Positions 17,092 through 34,251 of a stretch of 64,000 nt of DNA are shown here, piece after piece. The position numbers and the translations under genes are program-made. Below the pieces are notes generated by a model, which was not told where the DNA came from, searched no databases, and saw only the letters and a list, made by a program, of their open reading frames with translations. Every line of letters begins with the position of its first letter. Position 1 is the stretch's first letter. The DNA comes from Hyphochytrium catenoides (taxonomy: Eukaryota > Protista > Hyphochytriomycota), in the NCBI GenBank assembly GCA_900088475.1, contig FLMG01003947.1, forward strand, positions 62,001 to 126,000. Reading direction: 5' to 3'.

Positions 17092-18785
17092 TCAGCCCTT
17101 GGGCCTCTTACTTAGTGGTTGCTCAATGGTCTCCATAAGGTGGAGATATTGCGACGCTGTGTAGTCCTCTTCTTCGAAATATGAACCTAATGGGACTGAT
17201 TGTCCTAGAGCACCTTGAAGGGCCTGTGGCCTCTCAGAAACTTTGCTCGCTGCGTCTGCCTGATGGGCTTTAGCCATGCTATCGCTACCGGAGTAGATGG
17301 CTCCACGTGCGCTCTCAAAAGTAATACCTCCTTCATGCTTCTGCTTTGTCGGCTCTGCCGTGGCGTTTGCCGCTTGCTGCAGATTTTCGATTCCCGCAGA
17401 GGAAGCCTGGCGAGAAGCAGGTGCTGGAGGGATGCTTGGAAGAGAACGATTCGGGAGCTGGCACTCTGCAAGTGGAGGCCGAGGCAGTGCGCTACCCTGT
17501 CTAGTTGTAGGCATAGAGTCCGTCGCATTGCTAGTGTGGCGTAAGGAGCCACTGCCGGGATTGGGCCGCTGAGGAGGAGGGATGGATGAGAATGTGTTAT
17601 TGGCTGGAGCCTTCGAGCCGGGAGCGACCGCAGCAAGTGGCCTACAAGGACCGCCCGAGGTGCTAGAGGGTAGGGCCGCTCCCACCGCGGGCCCGGCTTG
17701 AGGCCCAAAACCGCCAGGTTGCATTCCCGTGCTGCTTGGAGGTTGCGCTTGGCGATGTTGCTGGCATAGGGAAGAGTAGCCCAGAAGTCAGTTGAGGAAC
17801 TGGGAAAAGAAGCTACCATACACACAGACAGGAGGTAAAGAGCAAATCGTCAATATAACTATAGCCGACGAGGTATGCAGTGCCAGGCAAGAAGGAGGAA
17901 CAAATATGATGAGAGGAGTGAGCAAGGTGTGAATTTTGAGCGAAGAAAAGCGCCTGGTCATGTTGCGTGAGGAGGTTACTTACCTCTAGTCGTGCTCTTT
18001 TGACTTCCTTGATATGCATCTTGTCATAGACCGAATTGCCCAGCCGCTCCCCGAATAGTCTTAAACAGCGTTTCCGAGCATCTGATACAGCAGCCTAGAC
18101 AGCGGCGGCGTTAGGATGAAAAATTCACGGAAAGATAGTGTGCAATGTACTGAGACTTGGTAAGGACTCGCTCACAATAGGGCAGATGAAAAGAGCTGTC
18201 GCATGTAAGGATCTATCCTAAGTTACCTTTTTCGCCTTCTCCAAAGACTTTCCTTTGTCCCTTTGGCCTTCACTCTGTCCAAACCCAATGTCTTCGTGAG
18301 CGGTACCGTCCTTGAGCTTGAAAAAGAGCCGCATTAGTCTCGTGGCACGCCATAGAACATGAGACTTTCCAGGAAGCCTATCTTACCTGTACTCGCACTA
18401 TGGCACTAGCTGTGACATACCACTTGCCTTGTTGCTCTTGGACCTAACGTTCTGTTCTGTTAGCTATTTTTTTTGACAGTGCAGATGCTTCGCTTACGAG
18501 CTCATCTTGGATTGAGAGTATGCTGCAGCTCCATCCGGTGAAGCCGAAGAGTTCGTTGGCCAGTTCTATCGTTTTCCAACTCTCGATGTAGCTTAGCTTG
18601 GATTGACCTGGCCCTGCGCGCTCAGCAATCTCCTCTCTGCCAAGCTTTTGCTGAAGCAGACTTCCGATCCTCGCCTTCTCTTCCTCAGTAAATTCGCCTT
18701 TTCCAAATCTCGTGTCATTATCCACCGCCGCCTGATTGCTTGCTATATAACCTTCAGCCGTCGCTGGCGAGAGCGATGAACTCAT
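17092..18785 (-). CDS. RAD52: DNA repair/annealing protein RAD52 (5 exons)
   Basis: LLQQKLGREEIAERAGPGQSKLSYIESWKTIELANELFGFTGWS / [54 protein letters not shown] is the Rad52/Rad22 domain. Disordered C-terminus ends in a basic KRPK. Confidence 0.95.
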
Positions 18786-20000
18786 ATCTGATGGCTACGT
18801 TTTCGTGCAGATCCCGCAATAGAGTCGCTGAGTCGGAATGCTATCAAATAGGGTCAGAGAGTTGCCTTCTGGTGGACCTGGGCTGTCATGCAATTTGGGA
18901 TAACGCATGTAAGGAGTCGAGCCAGGTCAAGGGAGATTAACACTCAGGCGGCGTAAGCAGGCTCCGTCTACGGCCCTGACTTCAGACAGTCAAGAGGCAC
19001 GACAGCTAGGAATGATCACATGTGTCGTTTCCTTATTGATAATGAATGACAACAAAGCTCTGGGCGGCACCGCGCCGATAGTTGCCGCCGTTTCTTCACC
19101 AAGTTCATACCCTGTACCGGTCCCGCCAAGATCAATACAACTGATCCTGATGAAGTTATCTATGCTGGCTGCATCTATTGTGACAATATATGGGATTTAC
19201 CAAAATGACACTGGAACTTGTAAGCCTCCGTTATTATGCCTGATACTGTATCCCTGAGAGTTAAGACTACATAAATGTTAAGGCTTTAAGCTTGACTGTT
19301 ATCCCTCTTTGAGGGAAGCGATAATCTCTGGAGGGATGTGGCGAAGAAGCACCTCTGTACCTGGAATGGGATGTTGAGGATCCTGATGACCAGCATCATC
19401 GACACATCAACAAGCTACACCTCTGTCCAAGGTTGAGATCAGAGAGCAATCGTCTAAAGTCAAGCTCTTCATCAAAGTCTGGATGACATGATGGGAGCTC
19501 CAGTAGCTCGAGCGCTGGTGGTTCGACAGAATAAATGGCTGCCGTCCAGACTCTCCGTTTTCCGACGCTACACTCTTCGTGAGGAAAGCTTTCCTCTTTT
19601 CTCTAAGATTACCTGTATGGACAAGGTCGCTAATATTCAGATAATTGTTTATTCAAGACAAAAGCGAAGGAGCCGGCGGCCACCATGTATGGCGACGTCA
19701 ATCTGCCACGAAGTGTTCCCTTCATGGCTCATTATCTCCCTACAGGAGTAAACCAAGCACTCGTTCCGGATATCTGCCGGTTCTTCGCCTTGCCTGCTTT
19801 GCTGTAAGGACAATTTTACGAGTCTAACTAGAAGCTCGTGCTGACTGGTTCGACACATACTGCATGTGGCTGGAGTGAGAGGCTACGGCTCCCAGTCTTA
19901 TACTGCTTTCCTACTCATCTCCTATGGAACTGCTGTTGCCAGCTGAACGACCGTCCAACTGCAGCTATTAGTGGACGACGCTTGATAAACGCCGAGTCAT

Positions 20001-21057
20001 CTAAATAATGTGTCCAGCTGGGCTCCTTATGAGCTGGAAGAACTCGCTTCGAGTCCGTGGGTCCGACTGGAAGCAGCCCAGTACAGAGCTTGTTACTGTG
20101 GAAGAGCCCGCCTTCTCGACTCCTCGAACTATCATACACATGTGACTGCAACGAAAGAGGTTAGTTTGCCCTTACAGTTTGCCAAGAGACTCAGACGGCA
20201 CGTACGATGCCTCAATGACAACCCCCACACCGAGAGGTTTTATAGCCTCCATTATAGCGGTCGCAATCTGCTTTGTCAGTCGCTCTTGGACTTGCAAGCG
20301 TCTGGAGAACATTTCTGCTATTCTAGCCAGCTTACTGAGCCCAAGTACTTTCCCGTTAGGAATGTAGCCAACATGAACCTGGAGAGAGTATTACAGTGTA
20401 AGCTGGGTCTGAACGCCAGGCGGTATACAAAGTAATACTTACCTTGCCCGTGAAAGGCACCATATGATGCTCGCATAGAGAGTAAAGGTCAATGTTCCGT
20501 ACAATAACCATTTCTCGGTGATCCTCCTCAAAAATGGCATCGTTCACGAGGTCTGTCAAAGTCTGTCCATAGCCCTTCGTACAGTAAAGAAGAGCCTTCG
20601 CCATGCGAAGAGGTGTCTTCACAAGACCTTCTCTTTCTGGATCTTCGCCCAAGCACTGCGATAGAAAGTAGTATTACAAGACATATCGAAGCATGACGCA
20701 AGAATTCTCTCACCTCTAACAACGTTCGTACTGCCTCTGACATCTTCTTCAACTTACGCTCGTCCTGGTCATTGATGGGGTTGCGTGTGGCGATTGACTC
20801 GGACAATTCCTTTAATCTCTCCTCTACGATAAGGAAGGTGAGATGGGTTTACCACTAATCAAAGTTGTGTGGATACCTTGATATGGGGTCAAGTCGCAGC
20901 TGCCAGTCCTGTTGCGCTTCGAACGGTCGGAGCTTGCCGGTGATGATAGCCCGTTAGCAGCACTTACAGAACTAACAGAGTGTGCTCGTTTTCGGTTGCT
21001 GGTTCCATCCTCCACGACCACCGCTGAGGGAGGCTTCATAGGCTTTACGAAGTCCAT
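20001..21057 (-). CDS. GCH1: GTP cyclohydrolase I (5 exons)
   Basis: [33 protein letters not shown] / [34 protein letters not shown] / [20 protein letters not shown]; Zn ligands present. Confidence 0.97.
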
Positions 21058-22028
21058 TCGCCCCAATTGCGTGCCCAGATTTTGTAGAAGTTATGCTGTG
21101 ATCTTCCGCTCTTAGGCATTCATCGCATCCTTCCCTCTGCCGCAGGTCAGGAAGCGTCTTAATCTTGTTTACGCGGTCTCCTTGGTAAGCGGTCCACGAT
21201 GCTCCTTCCGCCTATGGCAAAGGGAAAGTGGAAAGGGCGATCAACGAAGCTAATCACCTGTTCAAAGACCACCGACAGCAGTGCAATAAAGGTGGCTTCT
21301 AGACATCATCAACGCTATGATCGGGCTATAACTTCCTTGAGCTAGGGAAAGGAGAGAGGAGAGCGGGGAAAGGCTGATTAAGGAACTTTCACCCTTGCAG
21401 GACCGGGGGGTGTGCTGATTGGACTTGGTGCAACATTCCGCCAATCAAAACGCCTCCAGCAACAATTCTCTATGAAGGTAGAACCAGACAGGCATTATAC
21501 CCAATAAAGTCAGATACCAAGACTTAGATCACTGATCGTACAATTATTATTCAGAACAGTTGTGATATGTGGTTATCAAATGTGTTGGTTTTCTTAATGA
21601 GTCTCGGGTATAATTCAGTCTCGAATGCTGCTCGGCGGCTCGGGTCGCCGCGTTCGCATCTGTCTTCTTTTGCTTGTTGGAGCTTCCTCTCCAAGGTCTT
21701 TTGTGCCCATGTAGTTCTAGACAGCAATCTTCATCAGCTTCCAGGGCTGCTGTTGGAGATGGGAATGCGTTCGCGGGTGCGCTGTTGATGAATCATTGAG
21801 CTTTCAAGAGGCATGACACGCAGACCCGACCTCAATGACTATGAGCATTAGGCTCTAGTGGACTCCTGTGCTGCTTGAGGGCCCTACTGGACGGGCATGC
21901 TCCCTATCAGAGTACGACCTTGACCAGAGTGCGGGGAACCATCTCTTAAATCTCTCTCGCCGTTAGCGAAGAAATAGTAGGTCAAAGAAATTTGCTGTCG
22001 ACATCTTCAAGGGTCATACAGTCTCGGC

Positions 22029-23967
22029 ATGAGAAAGATGATAGGTGGACTTAATAGGGGCCTCAGAGCCATCGATAGTCGATTCCTGGCTTACCCTTGC
22101 ACGAGGAGGTCTTGCCAGATTGTGTCGATAACAGGCTGGTCTAAGGCTCCTTCCCTGCACTGCGTTTATGTACGGCATTCTCTATCTCCCTGCTCTTAAC
22201 TCCCTTGTGCTGATCGTACTTTCAATGCCTGTAGAGGAGGTCCCTCTTCCAGCTATCGTGGCGTTCAGAGACTAAAGATGGGTCTCAGAACTCAAGCGTA
22301 ACCCGAGTAGAAGCAACTTCGAAGACGGACAAGGATGTGGCTGTGTCTCCGCCCCCGCACTATGTTTTCAGCATGCCAGACATAGCAGACGTAAGCCGTC
22401 TGACTCAAGTTAGCTCCTGGCTGGTGGTTGACTCACCTTATCACCATTTTATCAGAAAAACATTGTTGGCACAGTGACCCAGTGGTATAAGAAGGAGAAA
22501 GAGGCGGTCACCGAAGGGGAGTTGCTGTGTGAGGTGAGCGCCAACTCCAGCAATTCTCTAAGAGTAATGCTCAGCATCAGGACTTGTTCCTCAGATCGAG
22601 ACCGAGAACTTAGTTGTAGATGAGGAGTCACCTATGAACGGTGTCCTCGCCCGAATCGGTACGGCCTTTCATTTTTCGGAGTCATCCCTTACCCGCAGAT
22701 TTATCGCTTCTTCTCAGCTCCTGTTGTCTTTGACCCTCTACGCCGTTAGCTCTTGTTTGCTTGGTCCGTCCTCCTTGCTTCCTCTCTCTCCCCTGATTGC
22801 TCTAGGTCTTAGCTCTTGTTCTGAATGCTCTTCGTCTTCCTTCACTCATGCGCATTCCGGTCTCTCCCTTTCCTTTCCGTTTGGTGTATGTCTAACTGTT
22901 CTCCGCTAATCTTTGTCTATATGCGCTCTCTAGTGGTACCTACGGGCACTCCTAACGTTCCTGTCGGCCAGACGCTCGCCATCCTGGTAGGGAAACCTAG
23001 CGTTTACTTGAGATCTAGGGTTAAATTGGTCTAACTTCGCTTATTTAGGTGTCTGACCCTGCTCATGTGGATGCCTTCAAAGACATAAAGCAATTTGGCG
23101 TGACAGAATCTTCGGGATATGGCATACAAACCGAGGACGAGAAACAAAGCGCGGAAGTGCTGAAGCTCCTCACTCAGTTACATGCCGACAACAAAATCAA
23201 AGACGAAGGTAAGGCCATAAAGATCCATCAGAAGTCAGGCTCAGGGGTTGTAGTCTCACATCTCCTACTGCCTCAGTCGCGTTGTCTGCGCTGAAGTCAC
23301 TAGCTATGAAGAATGACGGCAAGCTTCTTATCGTCTACAACGCTTTCTTTGATAAAGCGGAAGATGGCAGCATGACCGGGGATGTCGATAGCTTTATAAA
23401 GAATGCGTTGGAATTGGTAAGCAAGCAGAGTATTGAGAGCGCTGGAGCAGTGGACGTCTTGAGGGCAATCAATAGGTTAGCCAAAGAAGGAAAGATCACA
23501 GACAAAGGTATTGTGGCCCTATCCTCCAGTACCATGTCTCTCTTCCACACATGTCTCACTCACTGTTTTACGATAATTCTCATGAAAGGACCATTTCTGC
23601 TACAATCTTTGACCACGATGCGTGTTTACATTTATCCACATCGCTGCCCTTGCCGAAGTCACCTGGCTCTACTCTTGCGGCATTTGCAGCTCAAACAGGC
23701 GTTGCCCTTCATGTTATAGAGGTCTAACTCTCATTCCTTATCCCAGAGCATTTGCGCATTCTCAAAAAGCTCGCTCGGAGAAGTGATCCAGATTTGCTGG
23801 TCACATATTCAAGCTCCTACGACAAGCACGATAATTTTGATGAAGAGGGGTTCTTAGAAGGTTGTGAGGAGATAGTAAACGATTATTTAGAAGAGAAAAA
23901 GCAACAAGAAGCGGCTAGTTCACCAGGCCAAGTAGATGGCAAGGGAGCGGGAGACCCATCCAGCTGA
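22029..23967 (+). CDS. Probable mitochondrial protein with a lipoyl-like domain (no acceptor Lys) and two tandem helical repeats (8 exons)
   Basis: Arg-rich, acid-poor N-terminus. PPHYVFSMPD..GTVTQWYKKEKEAVTEGELLCE/IETENLVVDEESPMNGVLARI/VVPTGTPNVPVGQTLAIL/VSD..VDAFKD follows the E2 lipoyl-domain pattern. Exon phases are consistent. AATAAA at ~23976. Confidence 0.85.
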
Positions 23968-26815
23968 AGAGACCCAATAAATCTGGACTCATTTTAACTA
24001 TTCAAGTTGTATCGTTGGGAAGCTAGCGGTGGGCGAGGCTAACAATATAAGTGTACGTCCGTCGGGGAGGAAAGAGCTCCGCCAATCTAAGGGCCTTTTG
24101 TATGCCACTCATCTACAACGCTTGTTAGTAGGTCTGTCGGCTGTCAGTCATCACCAGTTTTCTCTTTCCTCTAGCGGAAGGTGGAGGACAGTTAAAGTAG
24201 TAGGGCGAGCTCCTAGTAAGAGTGTCAAGTGACGACTGAACTTAGTGGTGTGATAGTATGTAATATGAGAGACTGCTCCAGCTCTCGAGAGTGTGGGAGA
24301 AAGAAGGTGCTCTGTCTGTACCTTGGCTGGCCAGGCCTCAGTTCAGACAAGCACCACGCAGAGGAAGAGTTTGCGGGAACACACGCAAGTAGCAAAGGGT
24401 CTGAAAGAAGTTTATTGACTGAGATATAGAGGGTAAGAGGGAGTCTCCCTTGAGAGAGAGTCAGTCTACCTGAGAAATGCAAAGATAATAGAGTAACATT
24501 CAAGAGAAGTAGTGTCCACAGGCTATTCTGATAGCATGCAAAGAGAAAGAGGGAAGAAAGGGAAAAGGAAGAGAGCATCCTTCGTCAGAGCCATTCGTTG
24601 CCGACTCTAGTCGGGACTACCGCCGCCCTGAGAGTCCTCTTAAAGAGGAGAGGTCGCATCCCATACACCGGTCGATCCGTGTCCGGTGCGCAGTCAGGTG
24701 GTTAGCAGAAGAAGAAGAGCCAACAGAGGGAAAGTGTCAGGTTATCCATGTTGCCTTCTTGCGCTCCACCTTTCTGAGGAAGAAAGTACTGATAATAGAC
24801 ATGAGGAATAGGTAGGGGAGGGGGGCTTCTCTCGGTCTGTTGGAACAGAGAAGAAGAGAAGAAGAGAAGGTCACTGAGTAGATAGACGCAGACTTCTGTT
24901 GCTGCTTGGTATGCTGCTAATCTACTAGATTGAAGAAGTATTGGCCATTTCATTTTCCATACTACCAATGCCAGGAGATTCTCCGTAAGTCTGCCTGATA
25001 ACAAGCGTCTAACTTAGATGTGCATCCTCTCTCTGTGGCTGGGAAGATGAGGTAGGTTATGATGATATAATGTGACTAAAGAAGCGTCAATATCATCATC
25101 CTTTAGAACAACATTACTATTATTAGGGGTGATGAGGCAAGTCGAGGAGCATGCAGGAGGAGGATCACCACTAGTACTAATCAAGATGATCACCTTTGGC
25201 AGCAGTGACGAGAGATAATAAGAACAAGCAAGCAGTTTGAAGGGGGAAAGAACATGACGAATAGGGAGGGAAAAGAAGAACAAAGAAGAAACAAGGAAAG
25301 GAGGTGGAAGAAGAGGAGACGGCGGGCGGTAAGGGGAAAAGAAGGAAAGGAAGAAAGGAAGAAGAAGAGGAAAACGGTGGACTTAAGAAGGGAAGGCGAG
25401 AAGTGATGATGGGTGACTGATGAGTAACAAGGAGACGAAGAAAAGAGCTTAACAACATTCCGCCTGGTATACTGTTAGGTGACGATAGCAGAGAAGAGAC
25501 CTCCTCCCACCATAGCCCCAAGCGAGGAACTCGACATTGCATGCGAGGAGACCCTGATGCATTATGGTGGCATCATGATATTGGGGTTAGTTGTTGTTGG
25601 GTTGCCTGTGATTATGACTCTCCTGATGAAGAGGCTGGTGTGGTGGAGGGAAAAAAAGAGAAGATGAGTAAGAAAAAAGAGGAGAAATGAGCGGCGGGGA
25701 CAAAACAGAGCCCCAACGTAGTGGTGATAATTATCATAAGGACTGGACAAGCACTTATCTGGGAGGAGGGCGGCCGCAGGCAGCCAGTGGCCAATTATTA
25801 CGTACCATGGAGCTGCTACTAGCTATTCTCTTGCTTGAAAGACAACAAGAAGAGGTAGTAGGAGGAGGAGGTAGCGGTCTCACTAAATAATAAGAAGGAT
25901 GACAGCCATAATAGAACCGCATCCACACGGCAGCAAGCGGAGCGGATGGCGCTAACTACTTCTATAATGATGACGACGTGACGAATATTATAAGGAGGTA
26001 ATAAGTGAAGAAGAGAAAGGAGGAAGAAGAACGACTGGGCAGGGAAAAGAAGAAGAAGATCGAAGGATATTGCCAGTAGTAGCTGACTTTTTCTGCTTCC
26101 CTCGTCTGCAAGCGACGAGCAATAAGACACAACACCAACAACAAGAAAAACCGATCATCATGGACAGGAGGGAGGAGGCAGGACGGAGGAGGAGGAGCGA
26201 GGAATGAAGAAGAAGTTCTTATTGTTGGTGGGGAGGATCATCATCATCATCGACGGCGATGCTGGCTAGCGGGTGGCGGCAGTAGAGAAGGAGGAGTTGG
26301 AGAAGAAGGCGGAGGAAGAAGAGGAGCAAGCCACCCATGAAGAAGAAGAAGGACGGAGAAGGAGAAAGAACGAAGAAGAACAGCAGGTGATGGGGAGATA
26401 TTCGTAGTCCGGGAGGAGGAGGAGGGAGGAGGAAGGGGGAAGAAGAGATCAGAAGGAAGAAGGAAGAGGCAGAAGAAGGGAAGGAAGGAGGAGGAAGAGC
26501 TCCAGCAGCCTCTCTGTCTTGCCAGCAGTAGTAATAATAACAGTACCAACCCTTCCTGGCCCACCGCCTGTAGCTAACTACTGTGACGTTGTGGAACAGT
26601 AGTAGTAGTAGTAGGTCCAAACATGCTAAACGGCAGGAAGACAGAGCGAGGAAAAGCGTGAGACAGAGTAACACCAATATAAGCCTTTTCAACACTGGGT
26701 GCAGGCTCTAGAGATACCTGAAGAGGGTGACGAGAGAAGAAGTTGAGAGAGAGAGGGGGACGAGGGACGGTGGCCCTAAATAATAAACAAGACCGGTAGA
26801 ACGGTAGAGGGACCC

Positions 26816-26941
26816 AAACCGTAATATACTCTTCAAGTTGGTCTTAAGACGGTTACTTGGCATGGGTTTGGCATAATAAAAGCTCTAGAGACGGTGAGCG
26901 GCCCGAATTGGCAAACTTTACAATTTTGCTAATTACGGTTA
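26816..26941 (+). promoter_or_regulatory. Cluster of MYB-core-like (CGGTT) sites upstream of the MYB gene
   Basis: aaaccgtaat (26816), gacggttac (~26848), aattacggtta (26931). Confidence 0.3.
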
Positions 26942-27936
26942 GCGGCTCGCTCTATTGAGACGGCGCCTGCTTCCCCTCTCTCCTCCTCTTTGTTGTGTTT
27001 CAGTTGGGGGCTTAAGCTTCAAGAAGTGACAGACAGAGAGGCCGAGAGAGACGGAGGCCTCCGAGACAGATCAGCAGAGAGATAGGTCAATATAAGGGTC
27101 CAGAGAAAACGCAAAGAGGCCGATAACAAGAGACAGAGTACCCTGAGAGAAAGAGAACGACCAAACGAGAGAGCCCGCCAACTGGAAAAGAGCGGCTGAC
27201 AGACAGAGCGCCGACGGTCCAGAGAAGAGGAGGAGGAAGAAGGCTGAGGAGGAGTTAGGATCCGAGTGGCGCGTTTCCCCCGTTTCTCCGCCTGGTTCGG
27301 TCTTCAGTGATCATCACGATCCGAAGCTTCTCTGTCTGTTGGCAGCCTCAAAGCCTTAGATCATCTGCATCATCCCTTATCCCAGCCTGCGGAGCTAGTA
27401 TGTGACCTGTTCCCCAGTGCCAAGGACTGCAGAGCGAGAGGGCCAATCTTCTTGAAGTTACGTTGGTGAAGCGCGGCTTATTAATTCTGTCCCCTGACGC
27501 AGTTGTCCATCCCTCCTGCGGCTATCTCCTGATTATTACTCTGAGAGCCCATTGCCAGTGGACGGGTAGGGGTGGCTATCTTACAAGGCTAGCTAGCTAG
27601 CTGTGAGAGAGGTACGGCCGCTTATTTATCAGGCATATAGCTAGGGATTTCTATTATCTACTTCAGACGAGAAGATACTCGTGGCGTAGGCTATTTGTGG
27701 CGGCAAGATTACATTCTTGCTCCGTGCTGCCAGAGCGTGACACGGCACAAAAACGGCGCTGGAATGTGCTGCATCAGGGCGTCATTCTCTGCTGCCTCCC
27801 GTATCTGTTCTAGCTGACCACCGGCCAGTGGCTTCGTTCGGGTGCTATCAATTTGCAAGGCCTGCCAAACCACCCCATATGCTCGGCTAGCTCAATTTTG
27901 CCTTAGAATCACACTCTTAGAGCGAACGAGGACAAA

Positions 27937-30900
27937 ATGACGTCTTTTCAAGGACCCATGCACAGTGCCTACCGGCGTAACGAGAGGGTTAACGAGCCAG
28001 ATTATTATCGTTGCAGTTATTGTGGCAGAGCAAGCCAGGAAGAGCTGCTTCTGCCTTACGATGACGGCTCACATGCCTCTGGTCCCGTCATGCTCTGCAA
28101 GCGCTGCATGATAGGAAATAAGGTGCGGGTCTTCTGGCCAGTCGACATGCAGTGGTACATTGGCATGGTGCAGGACTATGACCCAGAAACAGACGAGCAT
28201 CTGCTGGCCTATCCTGATGGGGACACAGAATGGATTCGGATAGGTGACAACAAGGACCCAACACCTCATAGCATGCAGCTGCCGGCAATAACCCCTGCAG
28301 CACTTGCCAGTTATGGACTAATGAACGAGCGGATGGCGGCGCTGATGGCACAGAGTGCAGAACGGGCGAGGATGATGCAAGGAGAAAGACGCCCACCCAC
28401 GGTAAGCACGAGCTTTGAACGTTGAAATTTGCACAAACCTCCGTAAATCTTCTACTGGTCGGTCGTGGCGTTACCGCTGAGGCTTTTTAGTTCCTTGGTC
28501 CATTATTCCAAAGAAGTCGAAGCCCCATAATATCTCAGCCTACCTGTCTCATCCTTACTGTCTCCTTTCTCACTCTCCTCTCCTCTCGCTGTTCATTTTA
28601 AGCCCCAAATGCAGTCTCCGGGAGTGAGTTCCTTTCCACGTACCCATCAGGAGCCGTTGCCTCGCGCGAACGGGTCTATGGAAGGCTACGGCTATCATTC
28701 CTCCGGCGCTGTAGCGAACACCTCGGCGCAGGAGAGAGGCGAGAACGCCTCCTCGTCTGCTACAGGGACCAGCAGACAAGTCAATGCCAATCCTTCTCAA
28801 GGCTCCCCTTCTGTAGCTACCGCAACTGTGGACCAACTAAGAAAGATGCCAAAGAAAGGCACTGATAACTCTTGGACAGACAAGGAGGTACGACTCAATT
28901 TTCTTAGAATCTTTTTATCTTTACTGTTGGGTATGTACGTACGCTATCCGCTGCCCAAGTAGGTACTCCTTTGTTATGCTATGCGGTGTCATCGCCTTTG
29001 ACTTTAGGCTCAGCGATTATAAGTCCATCCCCACCACGCACAGTTTAACATTTTGGCATCAATAGGACGAGGCTTTATATGCTGCAGTCTTCAAGTATGA
29101 AGGCAAGGAGTGGGACAAGATCGCTCAAGAGATGCCGAACCGCACCGAGATGGAGTGCTTGGAGAGATGGAATAAGGTTATCAAGCCTGGGCTTAGTAAG
29201 CGATCGTGGACCAAGCAGGTACTTGACAGCTTTGATGCAGCGCTGCACCCCAGTGTGCCGTCCTGAAGAGCTACAATGGTATGGTGTTGACCCTTTTCTG
29301 TCGTGTAGGAGGACGATCTGCTCCAAGAGCTTGTCCAGAAGTTTGGAAACAAACGATGGTCTATGATATCGATGCATCTACCTGGTCGAACTGGGAAACA
29401 ATGCAGAGAGAGGTACGCGCACTAAAAACCGTTGAAGGCTTAAGCTCCTCCTCTTTTTCAAAATGGCGCTATCCTCATGACCTCAAGAAGGCTGGATAGC
29501 TCTGCATTTAGTACATGAAGTTGAGGGTTGATATCTTACGGTAATACTTCCATCCTCGTGTCTGCAGATGGTGCAACACTCTGAACCCAGACGTGCGCAA
29601 AGATAACTGGACACAAGAAGAGGACGCTATTATCTTTGAATATCATTCCAAGCTTGGCAACCAATGGGCAGAGATAGCGAAAAAGCTACCAGGAAGGTGG
29701 GTTCCTTACCGTCTGCCTCTCTGGCATGTGCCTGGGCAATGTGGATTGCCTACAGCTATCCCAGTTTAGTTTTGCCCTCCGTCTCTAGTATTCAGTAGCT
29801 GCGTTCTGTCGATCTTTTCAAAGCCATCTCTCTGACCGCAATGCTCACCAGGACGGACAACGCCATAAAGAATCGCTATTATTCTACTATCAGACGGTTA
29901 ATGAGGCAAGCGAAGAAGAACCCTGACGCGGTGGTGGAGTCTGCTCCCTTAGATGGTGACGTTGACTCAGACATCGTTACTTCCAAGCTAGAGCAGGCCG
30001 TTAAAGAGGTACAACGAGCGGCTTCTAGAAAGGCGAAGGAGGCCATCGTTTCGGGAAAGAGAGGGTTGAAAGGGCTAGAGGAGTCCTCCGCTAACGGAGG
30101 ACAGGCTCGGAGAAGAGTTGGAAGTGAGGAGGAAGATAGCGCAGCTGACAAAGGGATGGGGACCCCTGACAGAGTAGGCTTGCAAAGCCGCAGTCGAATG
30201 GAGTCCCAAGACAGCGGGACGCTGACCGATATATCCAAAGACAACGGAGGTGAGTCTGGTGCCCGGGCAATCGCACTTAGTGTATTCCTTCTTTCCTAAT
30301 CCCTACTTCCCTTATCTTGACTTTATTCTTTCTTTGAGGTTGCACCTTTCCTATTGCCGCTTAGTATGGCCAGTCGCTGCAACTACTCTCTCTCTCTAAG
30401 TTCCGGGGTGGACTGCGTTCCTTAGGAGTATGTCATTTTTGCTAAATCTTATCTTGTGGCTGTATCTCCACTGCGATAGATGGAGAAGCTTCTCAGAGCG
30501 GAATGATGGTAAACTCAGACGTGATGGCTCGACTTTTGTTCACAACTGCCAGAAGGGGAATGACTTCTTCCGAAGCATCCTCACGCTTTCTCGACAAGAG
30601 AAAGCGGAAAGACTCCCTACTCCGCGTCCCGGTGGGTCTGCCAGGAAGATCAAGCAAGTGTAGCAGGTGCAATCAGCCCAAAAGGGGACATTTGTGCCCC
30701 TTTAAAGGACCAGACGACCTTTCAGATTCAGAGGAAGAGGAAGGAGACAGTATAGAAAGTGGCAATGAAGGGAGCTCCGTTAGAGGTGGCAGTGCCCCAG
30801 CAGGAAGAGAAAGTTTTGGAAGAGATGGAAAGAGATCAAGAAGTGCCCTCAAGACGCACGAGCTTGTTTCCCCCAATACCCGGACGGACTTTGATGGAAT

Positions 30901-31498: not shown

Positions 31499-32621
31499 TT
31501 AGGCTCCTACAATGGCCCAAAGTTGAAGCTCTTTCACCTTTTCGTACTGCATGTACTGAGGAAAGTCATCTATGTTTATCTCTCGACCAATAAAGTGCTT
31601 CTCAGAACAGACTCCACAAGGTTTCTCTTGCTTGAGAAGCTTCAAGCATCTAGCGAGATCATTGTACTCTCCCATTCTACGAGTCCACTTCCTGTCCAGC
31701 AAGCTGTTGCAGTCGCCCTTCCCCTCTGCCTCGCCGCGCGGATGGGTGCAGACATGGGTGAGAAACCTGTGATAGCCTGGGCTTACAATGGCTGCATCCG
31801 CCAAGGAAAAGTTAACTCTCTTCTCAAAGCAGAGAAAGAGCGTCCGGGAGCCGGCGAGTAGGAGTCTGCGGAGGTCGAGGAAAGATTGTAAGAGATGATA
31901 AAGAAACGAGCTCTTGACGGTCGAAAATAGAAGACTAACCTGAGCAGCTGGAAGAGTCCGTCCACAAGCTCTCCGTTGTATATAACGTCACTGTCCAAGA
32001 ATATCATCTCATCAACAGAATTCTAGGATAAAGAGACAGCAAGTACAAAAAGATAACAGGGACGAATGGCAGGGACGCACCGCAGAGAGAGTTACAGGCA
32101 GGAACGCCATCAAGTAATGCTGGAAAGACAGTCATAGCGCTATCGTGAGGGAAGAGAAGTAGAGGAAAGCGAACCTACCTAGCAAACAAATATTGAATGT
32201 TGTCATAGTTCAACGCATCGTCTTCGCTCCAGTCAAACCTTGAGCGTGACTGAAGGCGAGAGGAGGTGCTGGGACAAGAGCTCCCATCCTTTCCGTTCTT
32301 TGGCAATCTACGTGCGGCCATCAGCATCCGGTCCACTTGTTCCATGGACTCGAAGTCAAGCCAGTCCACGCGCCTCACAGTTGCTTGATGTTGGGCAGAG
32401 CTCTTCTAGCATGAGATGAGAGGTGAAGGAATGCAAATGTAAGAGGTAGGGTTATTTTCTTTTGAGAAGCGGGCAGAAAGCATGAAAGCAATGAGGTTGC
32501 AATTCACAGAGGGTACCGAGGGATGGGGAGACTGATTGTGAGAGACAGAGAGGGGGGAGAGGGCGGGAGAGAGAGAAAGAGGTGACCTTCTGGAAGGAGC
32601 ACGACATAAAGAGGATAGGAA

Positions 32622-32655
<34 letters not shown>

Positions 32656-34251
32656 GGGTGAAGTGAGATCGAAAAAACGAAGGGAGGCTCTGTTCGTAGG
32701 CTACGGGAGCAGTTTCTAAGCTTTCTGTCCCTACATAAATATGCGAGTTCAGCTTCAGATTGCTGTCCAGAAGCGTCAGGATATCCTGCTGGTAGTCCGT
32801 CGCCACCACGTGCCTGCACACCCGCGCCAGGATGACTGCCAACAGCCCTAACACAGCAGATGTGACGAGAGAGAGATGAAAGAAGCGTAGTTAGCGGTAG
32901 ACTAGGAAGAAGCGAGGAAAAGGGGATCGATGGTTAGCAGAGAGAGAGAGAAACAGAAAGGGCAAAAAGTACTAGAGTGCTGTATAAGTCTGTGAGCAGA
33001 ACAGACCTACGCCGGCGCCCAGCTCAAGGGCAATGGATGATTCAAAAAAACTCTGCAAGGAGGAGAGGTAGCCATGTCGATAAGTAAGCGCATCAAACTG
33101 GACAGACAAGGAAACAGTTGGGAGCAACGCGCGGGTACGCGATGTATGTAGAGGGAAGGGAGAGTATGCTTGCAAAGGCAGAAGAAGTGAAGAGAGACGC
33201 ACAGATCACACAGCAAGCGAGTAGTAAGACAGAGCAGCGTTCAATGGAGATAGAAGATAGGACAAAACCTCTCAAGGTAGATGGGCCGCGAGCACCTGAT
33301 GATGAAGGACAAAGTCTGAGAGAAGCAGAGCGCCCCGCCATACTTGCAAGCCCACAAGCGCCATGGGAGTGGCCAATGTGTGCCTGAGAGTGACCGCGAA
33401 ATCTCTCTTCTCTTCTCTCTGCGTTGCCTCCTTTTCCTCTTCGTCTTCGGCCAGTCTCTTTCTTCGCCTTTTTCTACGAGAGACTCGGTCGCCATCTTCA
33501 TCTTGACTCTCTTCCGAGGATGATGATGTCTCTTCTTCCCTCTGCTGCAGATGGGAGAGAGGATAATAGACGTTGTACCGAGTGATCTGGAAGGGAGATG
33601 AAGAGAGATCAGTAAATGCAGGATGGTTAGCATCCTGACGCTAGAGCGACAGCAGGAAAGGAGAGAGACGCAGAGAGAGAGAGAGAGAGTAAGTGAGAAG
33701 GGGACAGAGAGAGACCCGGGGAGGAGGGGAGAGAAGGGGAAGAGATAGATAGAGACGAAGAAAACGGACGCAGAAGAGCCAAGCAGTGGACTTCTGACAG
33801 CTAACGTGCAAGGCTAATGCGGAAGAGAGGAGAAGACGAAAGCTCGCCAGAGAGCGAAGCCCAAGAGGGAGATGAGGAGAGAAAGAAGGATGACCACTGA
33901 GAGAAGGGATGCCGGAAAAGAAAGTGAGAAGGATGGGAGACAAGGTACCGTCTGAGCAAACTTGACCAGATTCCCTTTCCCGGCCGTGACTTCTAGCGCC
34001 TCCTCTCCTTCCTCCGCGATGCTGGCCACTCTCTCTTGCTCTGTCTCGCCGACGTGGAGATCTGACAGCACGAGATCATCGTCTTCTTCTGCATCACTCT
34101 CTTCCCTATCTCTCTCTTTCGCTCCTCCTCCTCGAATCTGAGCTTCCTGCTCCTCCGCGGCTGGTCCTCCGCTATGGTGGCCCTCTCTTGGCTCATCATC
34201 GTCTTCGCTTGCTTGTCCCTTCAATGTCACGTCTTCTTCGATCGCCAGCAT
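31499..34251 (-). CDS. METTL22: Seven-beta-strand protein lysine methyltransferase, METTL22-like
   Basis: LVLSDLHV; EDEDGDRV; LRHTLATPMALVGLQVWRGALLLSDF; motif I ALELGAGVGL; VVATDY; DVIYN; FEKRVNFSL; FPQYMQYEKVKELQLW. Confidence 0.88.

What the first reader, a model, noticed from the sequence alone, without database searches (positions are those of the whole stretch)
22029..23100. Mitochondrial lipoyl-fold protein that cannot be lipoylated: possible decoy regulator of 2-oxoacid dehydrogenases
Seen: the spliced product keeps the E2 lipoyl-domain pattern (MP..GTV..WYKKE.E.V.EGE.LCEIET....D.ES...G.LA.I.VP.GT..VPVGQ.LAI). The hairpin reads IETENL instead of IETDKA, with an Asn codon at 22607-22609, and both neighbours are also changed, so a single base error is unlikely. 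No E3/E1-binding or acyltransferase domain follows. Known: lipoate is attached to the Lys of DKA; PDH kinases and phosphatases dock on E2 lipoyl domains; plant BADC proteins are Lys-less biotinyl-domain regulators of ACCase. Inference: this could be an analogous pseudo-lipoyl regulator or adaptor for PDH/OGDH/BCKDH or the lipoylation machinery.
Basis: partly seen in the sequence, partly recalled or inferred. Interest (0 to 1): 0.78.

Follow-up and report, generated by a model that had tools for sequence, protein, structure and literature searches.

The report
Lysine-less lipoyl-domain protein, oomycete-lineage family
This is a real eight-exon gene for a probably mitochondrial protein whose lipoic-acid-carrying domain has lost the lysine that holds lipoate; all 30-plus water-mould relatives checked lack it too and evolve under strong constraint, so it is an unstudied, functional "dead swinging arm" protein.

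Summary
Observation confirmed and extended. It has 8 exons, all GT-AG, and encodes 367 aa. The parts are an Arg-rich presequence, one PDH-E2-type lipoyl-fold domain with hairpin IETENL (Asn codon AAC at 22607-22609), and two tandem ~78-aa helical modules.

A profile of the oomycete relatives matches the spliced product at 171 bits (E 1e-54). Relatives occur in Phytophthora, Peronospora, Plasmopara, Bremia, Pythium, Globisporangium, Lagenidium, Aphanomyces and one metagenomic eukaryote. Every member whose hairpin is present reads [IV][DE]TPD[LV]; none keeps the Lys.

Three intron positions, including the one directly before the hairpin, are shared with Phytophthora and the metagenomic gene. Phytophthora dN/dS is about 0.1 in the lipoyl part and 0.02-0.08 in the C-terminal module. 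So this is neither an error nor decay.

The lipoyl part is closest to human DLAT L1/L2 and PDHX. The C-terminal four-helix module has no known relative, and no E3-binding or catalytic domain is present.

Function is untested; a PDH-linked adaptor or regulator is the best guess. No RNA runs were listed. This scan had already noted the duplicated module on this same window and other odd lipoyl proteins elsewhere in this genome.

The parts
22029..22169 (+). Exon 1: start codon and Arg-rich N-terminal presequence (aa 1-47)
   Evidence: It starts at the first ATG of the ORF. The donor GTACGG at 22170 is in phase 0. It is needed because an in-frame TAG lies directly upstream of exon 2. The 5' exon is inferred and has no RNA support.
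22235..22390 (+). Exon 2: end of the presequence, the PPH motif and the first strand of the lipoyl-like domain (...PPPHYVFSMPDIAD)
   Evidence: The PPH-x-x-x-x-MP motif aligns with the PPH motif that precedes the human DLAT lipoyl domains.
22456..22533 (+). Exon 3: lipoyl-like domain, loop 1 and strands up to ...LLCE
   Evidence: Pfam Biotin_lipoyl E 0.095 for this 26-aa piece alone. The intron after CE is at the same position and phase as in Phytophthora and L001.
22595..22658 (+). Exon 4: hairpin IETENL and the following strands. Hairpin codons are 22595-22612, and the Asn codon that replaces the lipoyl-Lys is 22607-22609
   Evidence: The Lys of a bacterial E2 (P0055, TDKV) and of human DLAT (TDKA) aligns with this Asn.
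22934..22986 (+). Exon 5: last strands of the lipoyl-like domain (VVPTGTPNVPVGQTLAIL)
   Evidence: The preceding phase-1 intron is shared with Phytophthora and L001.
23049..23208 (+). Exon 6: post-domain helix and GY motif, short linker, and the first helix of module 1 (module 1 starts at about 23127)
23277..23507 (+). Exon 7: rest of helical module 1 (to about 23425) and the first helix of module 2 (from about 23426)
   Evidence: Profile matches for module 1 (aa 191-267, 48.8 bits) and module 2 (aa 268-348, 58.0 bits) are. The two modules are 30% identical to each other (E 5e-10). Both are split by a phase-1 intron at the same relative position.
23747..23967 (+). Exon 8: rest of module 2 (to about 23907), acidic/low-complexity tail, and stop TGA at 23965-23967

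Best explanation
The locus encodes the most divergent known member of a conserved family that is restricted, as far as these searches reach, to oomycetes and their close relatives. The protein is nuclear-encoded and probably mitochondrial.

Its architecture is: a presequence; one lipoyl-fold domain derived from the pyruvate dehydrogenase E2/E3BP type, in which the lipoyl-lysine turn (DKA) has been replaced (ENL here, PDL in oomycetes); a short conserved helix; a flexible linker; and an orphan four-helix module. Oomycetes have one such module; this organism has two in tandem.

Shown:
- The gene structure.
- The lipoyl fold, by profile for this protein and by model for an orthologue.
- Absence of any lysine in the turn in all members.
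- Absence of E3-binding and catalytic domains.
- Strong purifying selection in Phytophthora.
- Shared intron positions.

Inferred:
- It cannot carry lipoate, so it cannot shuttle acyl groups.
- It therefore works as a non-catalytic binding protein. The most likely role is an accessory subunit (adaptor or regulator) of the mitochondrial pyruvate dehydrogenase complex or its kinase, phosphatase or lipoylation partners. The dead lipoyl domain would supply one docking surface and the four-helix module(s) a second.
- Remodelling followed by invariance of the turn and the adjacent loop suggests a new, specific interface rather than plain competition with genuine E2 domains.
For: - Gene model.
- Match of the spliced product to the oomycete family profile: 171 bits, E 1e-54, in three stretches (lipoyl part 70.5 bits, modules 48.8 and 58.0 bits).
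- Pfam Biotin_lipoyl above the curated cut-off in orthologues (32.6, 37.1 and 24.6 bits against 22.1).
- The family profile hits human DLAT (E 3e-26; L2 stretch 1e-12) and PDHX lipoyl domains, with Lys aligned to Asp.
- The AlphaFold model of the P. infestans domain has a core pLDDT of about 90. Its best Foldseek matches are the PDHX lipoyl domain 2dnc and DLAT L2 in PDK3/PDK2 complexes, TM 0.63-0.74.
- Hairpin tally in proteins that hold it: IDTPDL 27, IDTPDV 2, IETPDL 1, plus Aphanomyces VETPDL and the L001 gene IETPDL. None has Lys.
- CEIDTPD is invariant in 23 sequences from Phytophthora, downy mildews, Pythium and Globisporangium.
- Three intron positions are shared with Phytophthora and L001.
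- dN/dS is 0.09-0.11 in the lipoyl part and 0.02-0.08 in the module.
- The presequence is Arg-rich and almost acid-free.
- The C-terminal module is modelled as four helices at pLDDT of about 88.
Against: - There is no experimental or expression evidence for this organism; no RNA run was listed.
- No paper mentions the orthologues that were searched for.
- Nothing links the protein physically to the PDH complex. The assignment rests only on the ancestry of the domain.
- The residues at and next to the lipoyl-Lys, which are among those that E1, the lipoyl ligases and (in crystal structures) PDK3 contact, are exactly the ones changed. Binding to those partners may therefore be lost rather than kept.
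- The C-terminal module has no informative structural or sequence relative: best Z 5.5 against generic helical bundles, PDB profile E >= 0.49, hhalign against one E2's region that should hold the PSBD gave probability 0.2%.
- Mitochondrial location is only inferred from composition.
Confidence: 0.5

Rival explanations
1. The protein keeps a lipoyl-derived fold, but its job has nothing to do with 2-oxoacid dehydrogenases. The domain would be a generic protein-binding module, the conserved four-helix module would be the functional heart, and the protein would serve another mitochondrial (or non-mitochondrial) process.
For: - The C-terminal module is the most constrained part (dN/dS 0.02-0.08) and was duplicated here.
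- The surface that defines lipoyl-domain recognition is the part that changed.
- In Phytophthora and in the metagenomic relative the gene sits head-to-head with ribosomal protein eS30. This gives no PDH hint.
Against: - The domain retains PDH-E2-specific flanks (the PPH motif before it, an acidic helix ending in Phe after it).
- It also keeps most core and surface positions of DLAT L1/L2. That is easier to explain if some PDH-related partner still recognises it.
Confidence: 0.3
2. It is a pure competitive decoy, analogous to plant BADC. The Lys-less domain would occupy the sites on E1, E3, PDK/PDP or the lipoyl transferase that normally take E2 lipoyl domains, and so would damp flux or lipoylation.
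For: - The architecture, a carrier-domain homologue without the modifiable Lys, parallels BADC. BADC proteins are BCCP homologues that lack the biotinylation site and negatively regulate ACCase (abstracts of 10.1101/634550 and 10.1101/2023.08.31.555777, listed).
- The best structural matches include L2 as bound to PDK3 and PDK2.
Against: - A decoy should preserve the recognition turn apart from the Lys. Here the residues on both sides are changed, and oomycetes have a 5-residue insertion in the neighbouring loop.
- The decoy idea does not explain the highly conserved, duplicated C-terminal module.
- There are no functional data.
Confidence: 0.15
3. It is an artefact or decay: a sequencing error, a wrong splice model, or a degenerating E2/E3BP duplicate evolving neutrally.
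For: No RNA data for this organism. The 5' exon is only inferred.
Against: - There are eight in-frame exons with canonical splice sites.
- The alignment to orthologues is unbroken across the junctions.
- The Lys is absent from all orthologues.
- The intron directly before the hairpin is conserved.
- dN/dS is about 0.1.
Confidence: 0.03

Closest known systems
Lipoyl domains of mitochondrial PDH E2 (DLAT L1/L2) and of E3BP (PDHX)
   Same: - Same fold and clear sequence homology: profile E 3e-26 to DLAT, and Foldseek top hits 2dnc, 1y8n, 2q8i and 3crk.
- Same PPH lead-in and the same acidic helix ending in Phe after the domain.
- Conserved Glu-Ile-[Glu/Asp]-Thr before the turn, and the Gly 11 residues after the Lys position.
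   Different: - The Lys of DKA is Asn here and Asp in oomycetes, and its neighbours are also changed.
- No PSBD and no catalytic or core-forming domain follow; an orphan four-helix module follows instead.
- The protein is far shorter than an E2 or E3BP.
Plant BADC proteins (Lys-less BCCP homologues that negatively regulate heteromeric ACCase)
   Same: The concept is the same: a swinging-arm carrier domain that has lost the residue carrying the cofactor, retained under selection as a separate non-catalytic protein (BADC described in the papers).
   Different: - Different branch of the single-hybrid-motif superfamily: BADC derives from the biotinyl carrier, this protein from the lipoyl E2p domain.
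- Different compartment and lineage.
- BADC's inhibitory action is shown experimentally; nothing has been tested here.
- BADC has no equivalent of the C-terminal four-helix module.
Uncharacterised oomycete 'Lipoyl-binding domain-containing proteins' (e.g. P. infestans PITG_19668, P. sojae PHYSODRAFT_475213; some are annotated as dihydrolipoamide acetyltransferase)
   Same: They are orthologous. They share the architecture, three intron positions, the Lys-less hairpin and the C-terminal module.
   Different: - Identity is only about 35%.
- The hairpin is TENL rather than TPDL.
- The first loop has the canonical length, without the 5-residue insertion.
- The C-terminal module is duplicated, and there are extra introns.
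- The acetyltransferase names given in databases are not justified, because no catalytic domain is present.
Kgd4/MRPS36-type small adaptor subunits of 2-oxoacid dehydrogenase complexes
   Same: They are small, non-catalytic accessory proteins of such complexes.
   Different: No sequence relation was found, and the adaptor role here is only a hypothesis.

Membership tests
Biotin_lipoyl (PF00364) fold, PDH-E2-type lipoyl domain | Significant match to the family profile | tested here: met
   Orthologues score 24.6-37.1 bits against a cut-off of 22.1. The window's domain matches the orthologue profile at 70.5 bits. Window exon 3 alone gives only E 0.095. The full spliced domain could not be sent to Pfam because it has no reference.
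Biotin_lipoyl (PF00364) fold, PDH-E2-type lipoyl domain | Flattened beta-barrel (barrel-sandwich hybrid) fold | tested here: met
   Tested on the P. infestans orthologue, not on the window protein. The AlphaFold core has pLDDT of about 90, and the Foldseek top hits are all lipoyl or biotinyl domains.
Functional (lipoylatable) lipoyl domain | Lys at the tip of the hairpin (DKA/DKV motif) | tested here: not met
   Asn (AAC at 22607-22609) in the window and Asp in all oomycete members. No Lys lies within 10 residues of the turn.
2-oxoacid dehydrogenase E2 acyltransferase | Peripheral-subunit-binding domain (PF02817) and catalytic domain (PF00198) | tested here: not met
   No Pfam hit in exons 6-8 or in the orthologues' C-terminal halves. 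hhalign of the module against residues 120-200 of one bacterial E2 (chosen by position as its PSBD region) gave probability 0.2%.
E3-binding protein (PDHX / protein X) | Lipoylated lipoyl domain + E3-binding domain + E2-like core domain | tested here: not met
   Only the lipoyl-fold part is present, and it lacks the Lys.
BADC-like pseudo-carrier regulators | Carrier-domain homologue lacking the modifiable Lys, kept under selection | tested here: met
   This is a functional analogy only, because the domain descends from the lipoyl branch and not from BCCP.
BADC-like pseudo-carrier regulators | Binds the parent enzyme complex and inhibits it | not testable with these tools
   Needs biochemistry.
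Oomycete PITG_19668-like family | Presequence + Lys-less E2p-type lipoyl domain + conserved helix/GY motif + four-helix module, with shared intron positions | tested here: met
   The window differs in having two modules.

The most novel reading that the evidence does not exclude
Oomycetes and their relatives have a dedicated 'dead swinging arm' subunit. It would be a non-lipoylatable E2p-type lipoyl domain tethered to a lineage-specific four-helix docking module, regulating or organising the mitochondrial pyruvate dehydrogenase complex (or its kinase, phosphatase or lipoylation relay). That would be the first BADC-like pseudo-carrier described for a 2-oxoacid dehydrogenase complex, and it is absent from the plant and animal hosts of these pathogens.
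Probability: 0.25. Interest if true: 0.8.

Novelty: new variant of a known kind. Interest (0 to 1): 0.6.

Why it matters
- Lipoyl domains are defined by the lysine that carries the cofactor. A lipoyl-domain protein that has lost this lysine, has no catalytic partner domain, and has been held under strong constraint across the sampled oomycete orders (Saprolegniales to Peronosporales) and in one more distant relative implies a non-catalytic role that has not been described for 2-oxoacid dehydrogenase systems.
- The only well-known parallel is plant BADC in the biotin world.
- Databases name several members "dihydrolipoamide acetyltransferase". That is wrong and could mislead metabolic reconstructions of important crop and fish pathogens.
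- The family, and especially its orphan four-helix module, appears lineage-specific. It therefore gives a clean handle on how central carbon metabolism is organised or regulated differently in this group.

Tried and rejected
- **RNA evidence:** The look-up of sequencing runs listed no run, so read laying was not used and the splice model has no read support.
- **Whole spliced protein:** it has no reference, so it was not sent to Pfam, PDB, Atlas or the big searches. It was analysed locally against fetched orthologues instead.
- **Single-exon Pfam scans:** nearly blank.
- **Atlas feature searches** with exon 7 and with the P. infestans C-terminal part: nothing usable.
- **Atlas fold search:** only TM <= 0.31.
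- **Full-length AlphaFold model:** it failed on the lipoyl part (pLDDT < 50), so a domain-only alignment was needed.
- **Fold search of the four-helix module:** only generic bundles, such as the Zuotin four-helix bundle at Z 5.5 and MLLE/PABC at about 4.6. I rejected these as evidence of kinship.
- **PDB profile search of the module:** E >= 0.49.
- **PSBD comparison:** negative, against one bacterial E2 only.
- **phmmer hits of exon 7 to long proteins (P0001, P0002, P0004, P0005):** P0005, the one I read, is a long bacterial-looking repeat protein that matches a low-complexity stretch of the query; I treated all four as spurious, the other three without reading them.
- **Two metagenome scans:** no confirmed locus.
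- **Naming the organism:** Earlier notes call it an intron-rich oomycete-lineage microbe.
- **eS30 synteny:** the head-to-head eS30 neighbour seen in Phytophthora and L001 is not present in the window.
- **Literature:** searches for the orthologue locus tags and for Lys-less lipoyl domains found no description.
Full report
**1. What is in the sequence**

Reading 21500-24300 and joining the open pieces gives one gene on the + strand with eight exons:
- 22029-22169
- 22235-22390
- 22456-22533
- 22595-22658
- 22934-22986
- 23049-23208
- 23277-23507
- 23747-23967

Every intron begins GT and ends AG. The joined frame is open for 367 codons and ends at TGA 23965-23967.

The lipoyl part contains four lysines, all in the first loop or the WYKKEKE strand; none is in or near the turn.

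Exon 1 is needed because an in-frame TAG sits immediately upstream of exon 2. It supplies an N-terminus with 9 Arg, 2 Lys, 1 Asp and 0 Glu in 58 residues. That is what a mitochondrial presequence looks like, but this is an inference. No RNA run could be listed, so no read evidence exists for splicing or for the codon.

**2. Relatives**

The spliced protein has no reference, so I searched with pieces by reference and did the whole-protein work locally.

An exhaustive phmmer search with exon 7 (76 aa) against 1.84 billion representatives gave only eight hits. Four of them were real relatives at 40-46% identity.

From one of these (P0008) a word-indexed search returned 33 oomycete proteins of about 260-270 aa. 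They come from Phytophthora, Peronospora, Hyaloperonospora, Plasmopara, Bremia, Peronosclerospora, Nothophytophthora, Globisporangium and Pythium. Most are named "Lipoyl-binding domain-containing protein"; some are named dihydrolipoamide acetyltransferase. Two profile searches added Lagenidium, Pythium oligandrum, Aphanomyces astaci and several metagenomic or Logan fragments, and nothing outside this lineage.

A profile built from 23 of these sequences matches my spliced product at 171 bits (E 1e-54) in three stretches:
- the lipoyl part, aa 59-179, 70.5 bits
- the first copy of the C-terminal module, aa 191-267, 48.8 bits
- the second copy of the C-terminal module, aa 268-348, 58.0 bits

Oomycetes have one module; the window protein has two. 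The two copies are 30% identical to each other (E 5e-10), and each is split by a phase-1 intron at the same relative place.

**3. The lysine is missing everywhere**

In the local and tool alignments the position of the lipoyl-Lys is Asn in the window and Asp in every oomycete sequence. A bacterial E2 in the same alignment has TDKV, and human DLAT has TDKA.

The tally over fetched proteins that contain the turn is IDTPDL 27, IDTPDV 2 and IETPDL 1. To these add Aphanomyces VETPDL and the metagenomic gene L001 with IETPDL. None has Lys.

In the 23-sequence alignment (Phytophthora, downy mildews, Pythium, Globisporangium) M-C-E-I-D-T-P-D is invariant. The family members whose gene models lack the turn are fragments or mispredictions that break exactly after "MCE". 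That is where an intron lies.

**4. Gene-structure support**

I spliced three Phytophthora genes exactly to their database proteins and the metagenomic gene L001 by hand. Three introns are shared with the window gene:
- The intron between ...CE and the hairpin is phase 0 in Phytophthora and L001, as in the window.
- The intron after ...AR[LI] / ...AKL is phase 1 in all.
- The intron after the MPDL-type motif is within one codon of the window's.

Because the intron just before the hairpin is conserved, the exon that carries IETENL is correctly joined.

**5. Selection**

Nei-Gojobori estimates were made between P. infestans, P. sojae and P. ramorum, with dS about 0.8-1.0.

| Region | dN/dS |
|---|---|
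| Whole gene | 0.13-0.20 |
| Presequence | 0.40-0.55 |
| Lipoyl-like domain | 0.09-0.11 |
| C-terminal module | 0.02-0.08 |

This removes the "evolving neutrally" refutation for the family. It cannot be measured in the window's own lineage, because no close relative was found.

**6. What kind of lipoyl domain**

- Pfam Biotin_lipoyl is above the curated cut-off in orthologues.
- The family profile finds human DLAT (E 3e-26; both L1 and L2, L2 at 1e-12) and then PDHX. BCKDH and OGDH domains score far weaker.
- The match includes the PPH motif before the domain and the acidic helix ending in Phe after it. Both are typical of mitochondrial E2p/E3BP.
- A domain-only AlphaFold model of the P. infestans protein has a core pLDDT of about 90. 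Its best Foldseek hits are the PDHX lipoyl domain (2dnc) and DLAT L2 as seen bound to PDK3 and PDK2, with TM 0.63-0.74.

Two features differ from canonical domains. One is the turn: D-K-A becomes P-D-L in oomycetes and E-N-L here. The other is the neighbouring first loop, which in oomycetes carries a 5-residue insertion and is modelled with low confidence. In real lipoyl domains these two elements lie side by side and form the recognition surface (established knowledge, not tested here). The rest of the domain is retained, including the Glu six residues after the Lys position and the Gly eleven residues after it.

**7. The C-terminal module**

AlphaFold models it as four helices with pLDDT of about 88. 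The searches for relatives came back as follows:
- Pfam: no family.
- PDB profile search: E >= 0.49.
- hhalign against the presumed peripheral-subunit-binding region of one bacterial E2 (residues 120-200): probability 0.2%.
- Structure search of 48,161 chains: only generic helical bundles, best Z 5.5, well inside the tool's stated noise for helical domains.
- Atlas searches: blank.

The module is an orphan. No E3-binding or acyltransferase domain is present.

**8. Interpretation**

Firmly supported:
- This is a genuine, constrained member of an oomycete-lineage family of PDH-E2-derived lipoyl-fold proteins.
- The family cannot be lipoylated at the canonical site and has no catalytic domain.

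Inferred:
- It acts by binding other proteins.
- The ancestry of the domain makes the PDH complex, its kinase or phosphatase, or the lipoylation relay the most plausible partners.
- The architecture (domain, flexible linker, small helical module) mimics the N-terminal part of an E2 chain without the core. That fits an adaptor or regulator.
- Two modules in this organism would make the protein bivalent.

The strict decoy reading is weakened in two ways. The recognition turn is changed on both sides of the Lys and then frozen, which suggests a new interface. The decoy idea also leaves the most conserved part of the protein unexplained.

Whether PDK docking needs the lipoyl group is not settled. 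In the PDK3-L2 crystal structures, as I recall them (not checked here), the lipoyl-lysine is buried in the kinase. One solution study instead reports that the lipoamide region of L2 does not contribute to PDK2/PDK3 binding (PMC5322387).

A role unrelated to 2-oxoacid dehydrogenases cannot be excluded.

**9. Novelty**

I found no paper on the orthologues searched for or on Lys-less lipoyl-domain proteins of this kind. The nearest concept is plant BADC. The proteins are already in public databases as uncharacterised or misnamed entries. The finding is therefore a new variant of a known kind, not a new kind of molecule.

**10. Surroundings**

- Upstream on the minus strand lie an exon of GTP cyclohydrolase I (20356-20652, Pfam E 4e-24) and a Rad52 exon (18444-18785). 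Downstream is a weak Tudor-like ORF (27937-28425).
- No Rfam family reaches threshold in 19000-27000.
- None of these neighbours suggests a functional link.

Noticed in passing
L001:2433-2603 (-), L002:858-1235 (-), L003:862-1206 (-), L004:879-1228 (-): In P. infestans, P. sojae, P. ramorum and the AT-rich metagenomic eukaryote (L001), the Lys-less lipoyl gene sits head-to-head with the ribosomal protein eS30 gene. This is a conserved divergent gene pair. The window has no eS30 nearby (tblastn blank).
   Followed up: partly
window 20356-20652 (-) and 18444-18785 (-): Upstream neighbours on the minus strand are an exon of GTP cyclohydrolase I (Pfam E 3.9e-24) and an exon of a Rad52/Rad22-family protein (E 5.7e-16).
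   Followed up: partly
window 27937-28425 (+): A 162-aa ORF with a weak Tudor-like match (PTM/DIR17 Tudor, E 4e-4, below the curated cut-off).
   Followed up: no
window 24001-28000 and 32001-34000: There is strong purine excess on the + strand (GC skew 0.18-0.26, AT skew 0.20-0.29). The minus-strand ORFs there are Ser/Leu/Pro/Phe-rich and of low complexity, which suggests a purine-rich coding or repeat region on the + strand.
   Followed up: no
window 22659-22933: Intron 4 of the gene is unusually long for this gene (275 bp against 61-69 bp for most; intron 7 is 239 bp). It is pyrimidine-rich and contains a short direct repeat (ttagctcttgtt, twice).
   Followed up: no
database entries P0015, P0024, P0027, P0028, P0032, P0011, P0045: Several orthologues carry misleading public names. 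Some are called dihydrolipoamide acetyltransferase although no catalytic domain is present; others are called 60S ribosomal protein L27a or RxLR effector protein. Several gene models (P0008, P0009, P0011, P0037) misplace the splice junction at the conserved intron just before the hairpin.
   Followed up: partly
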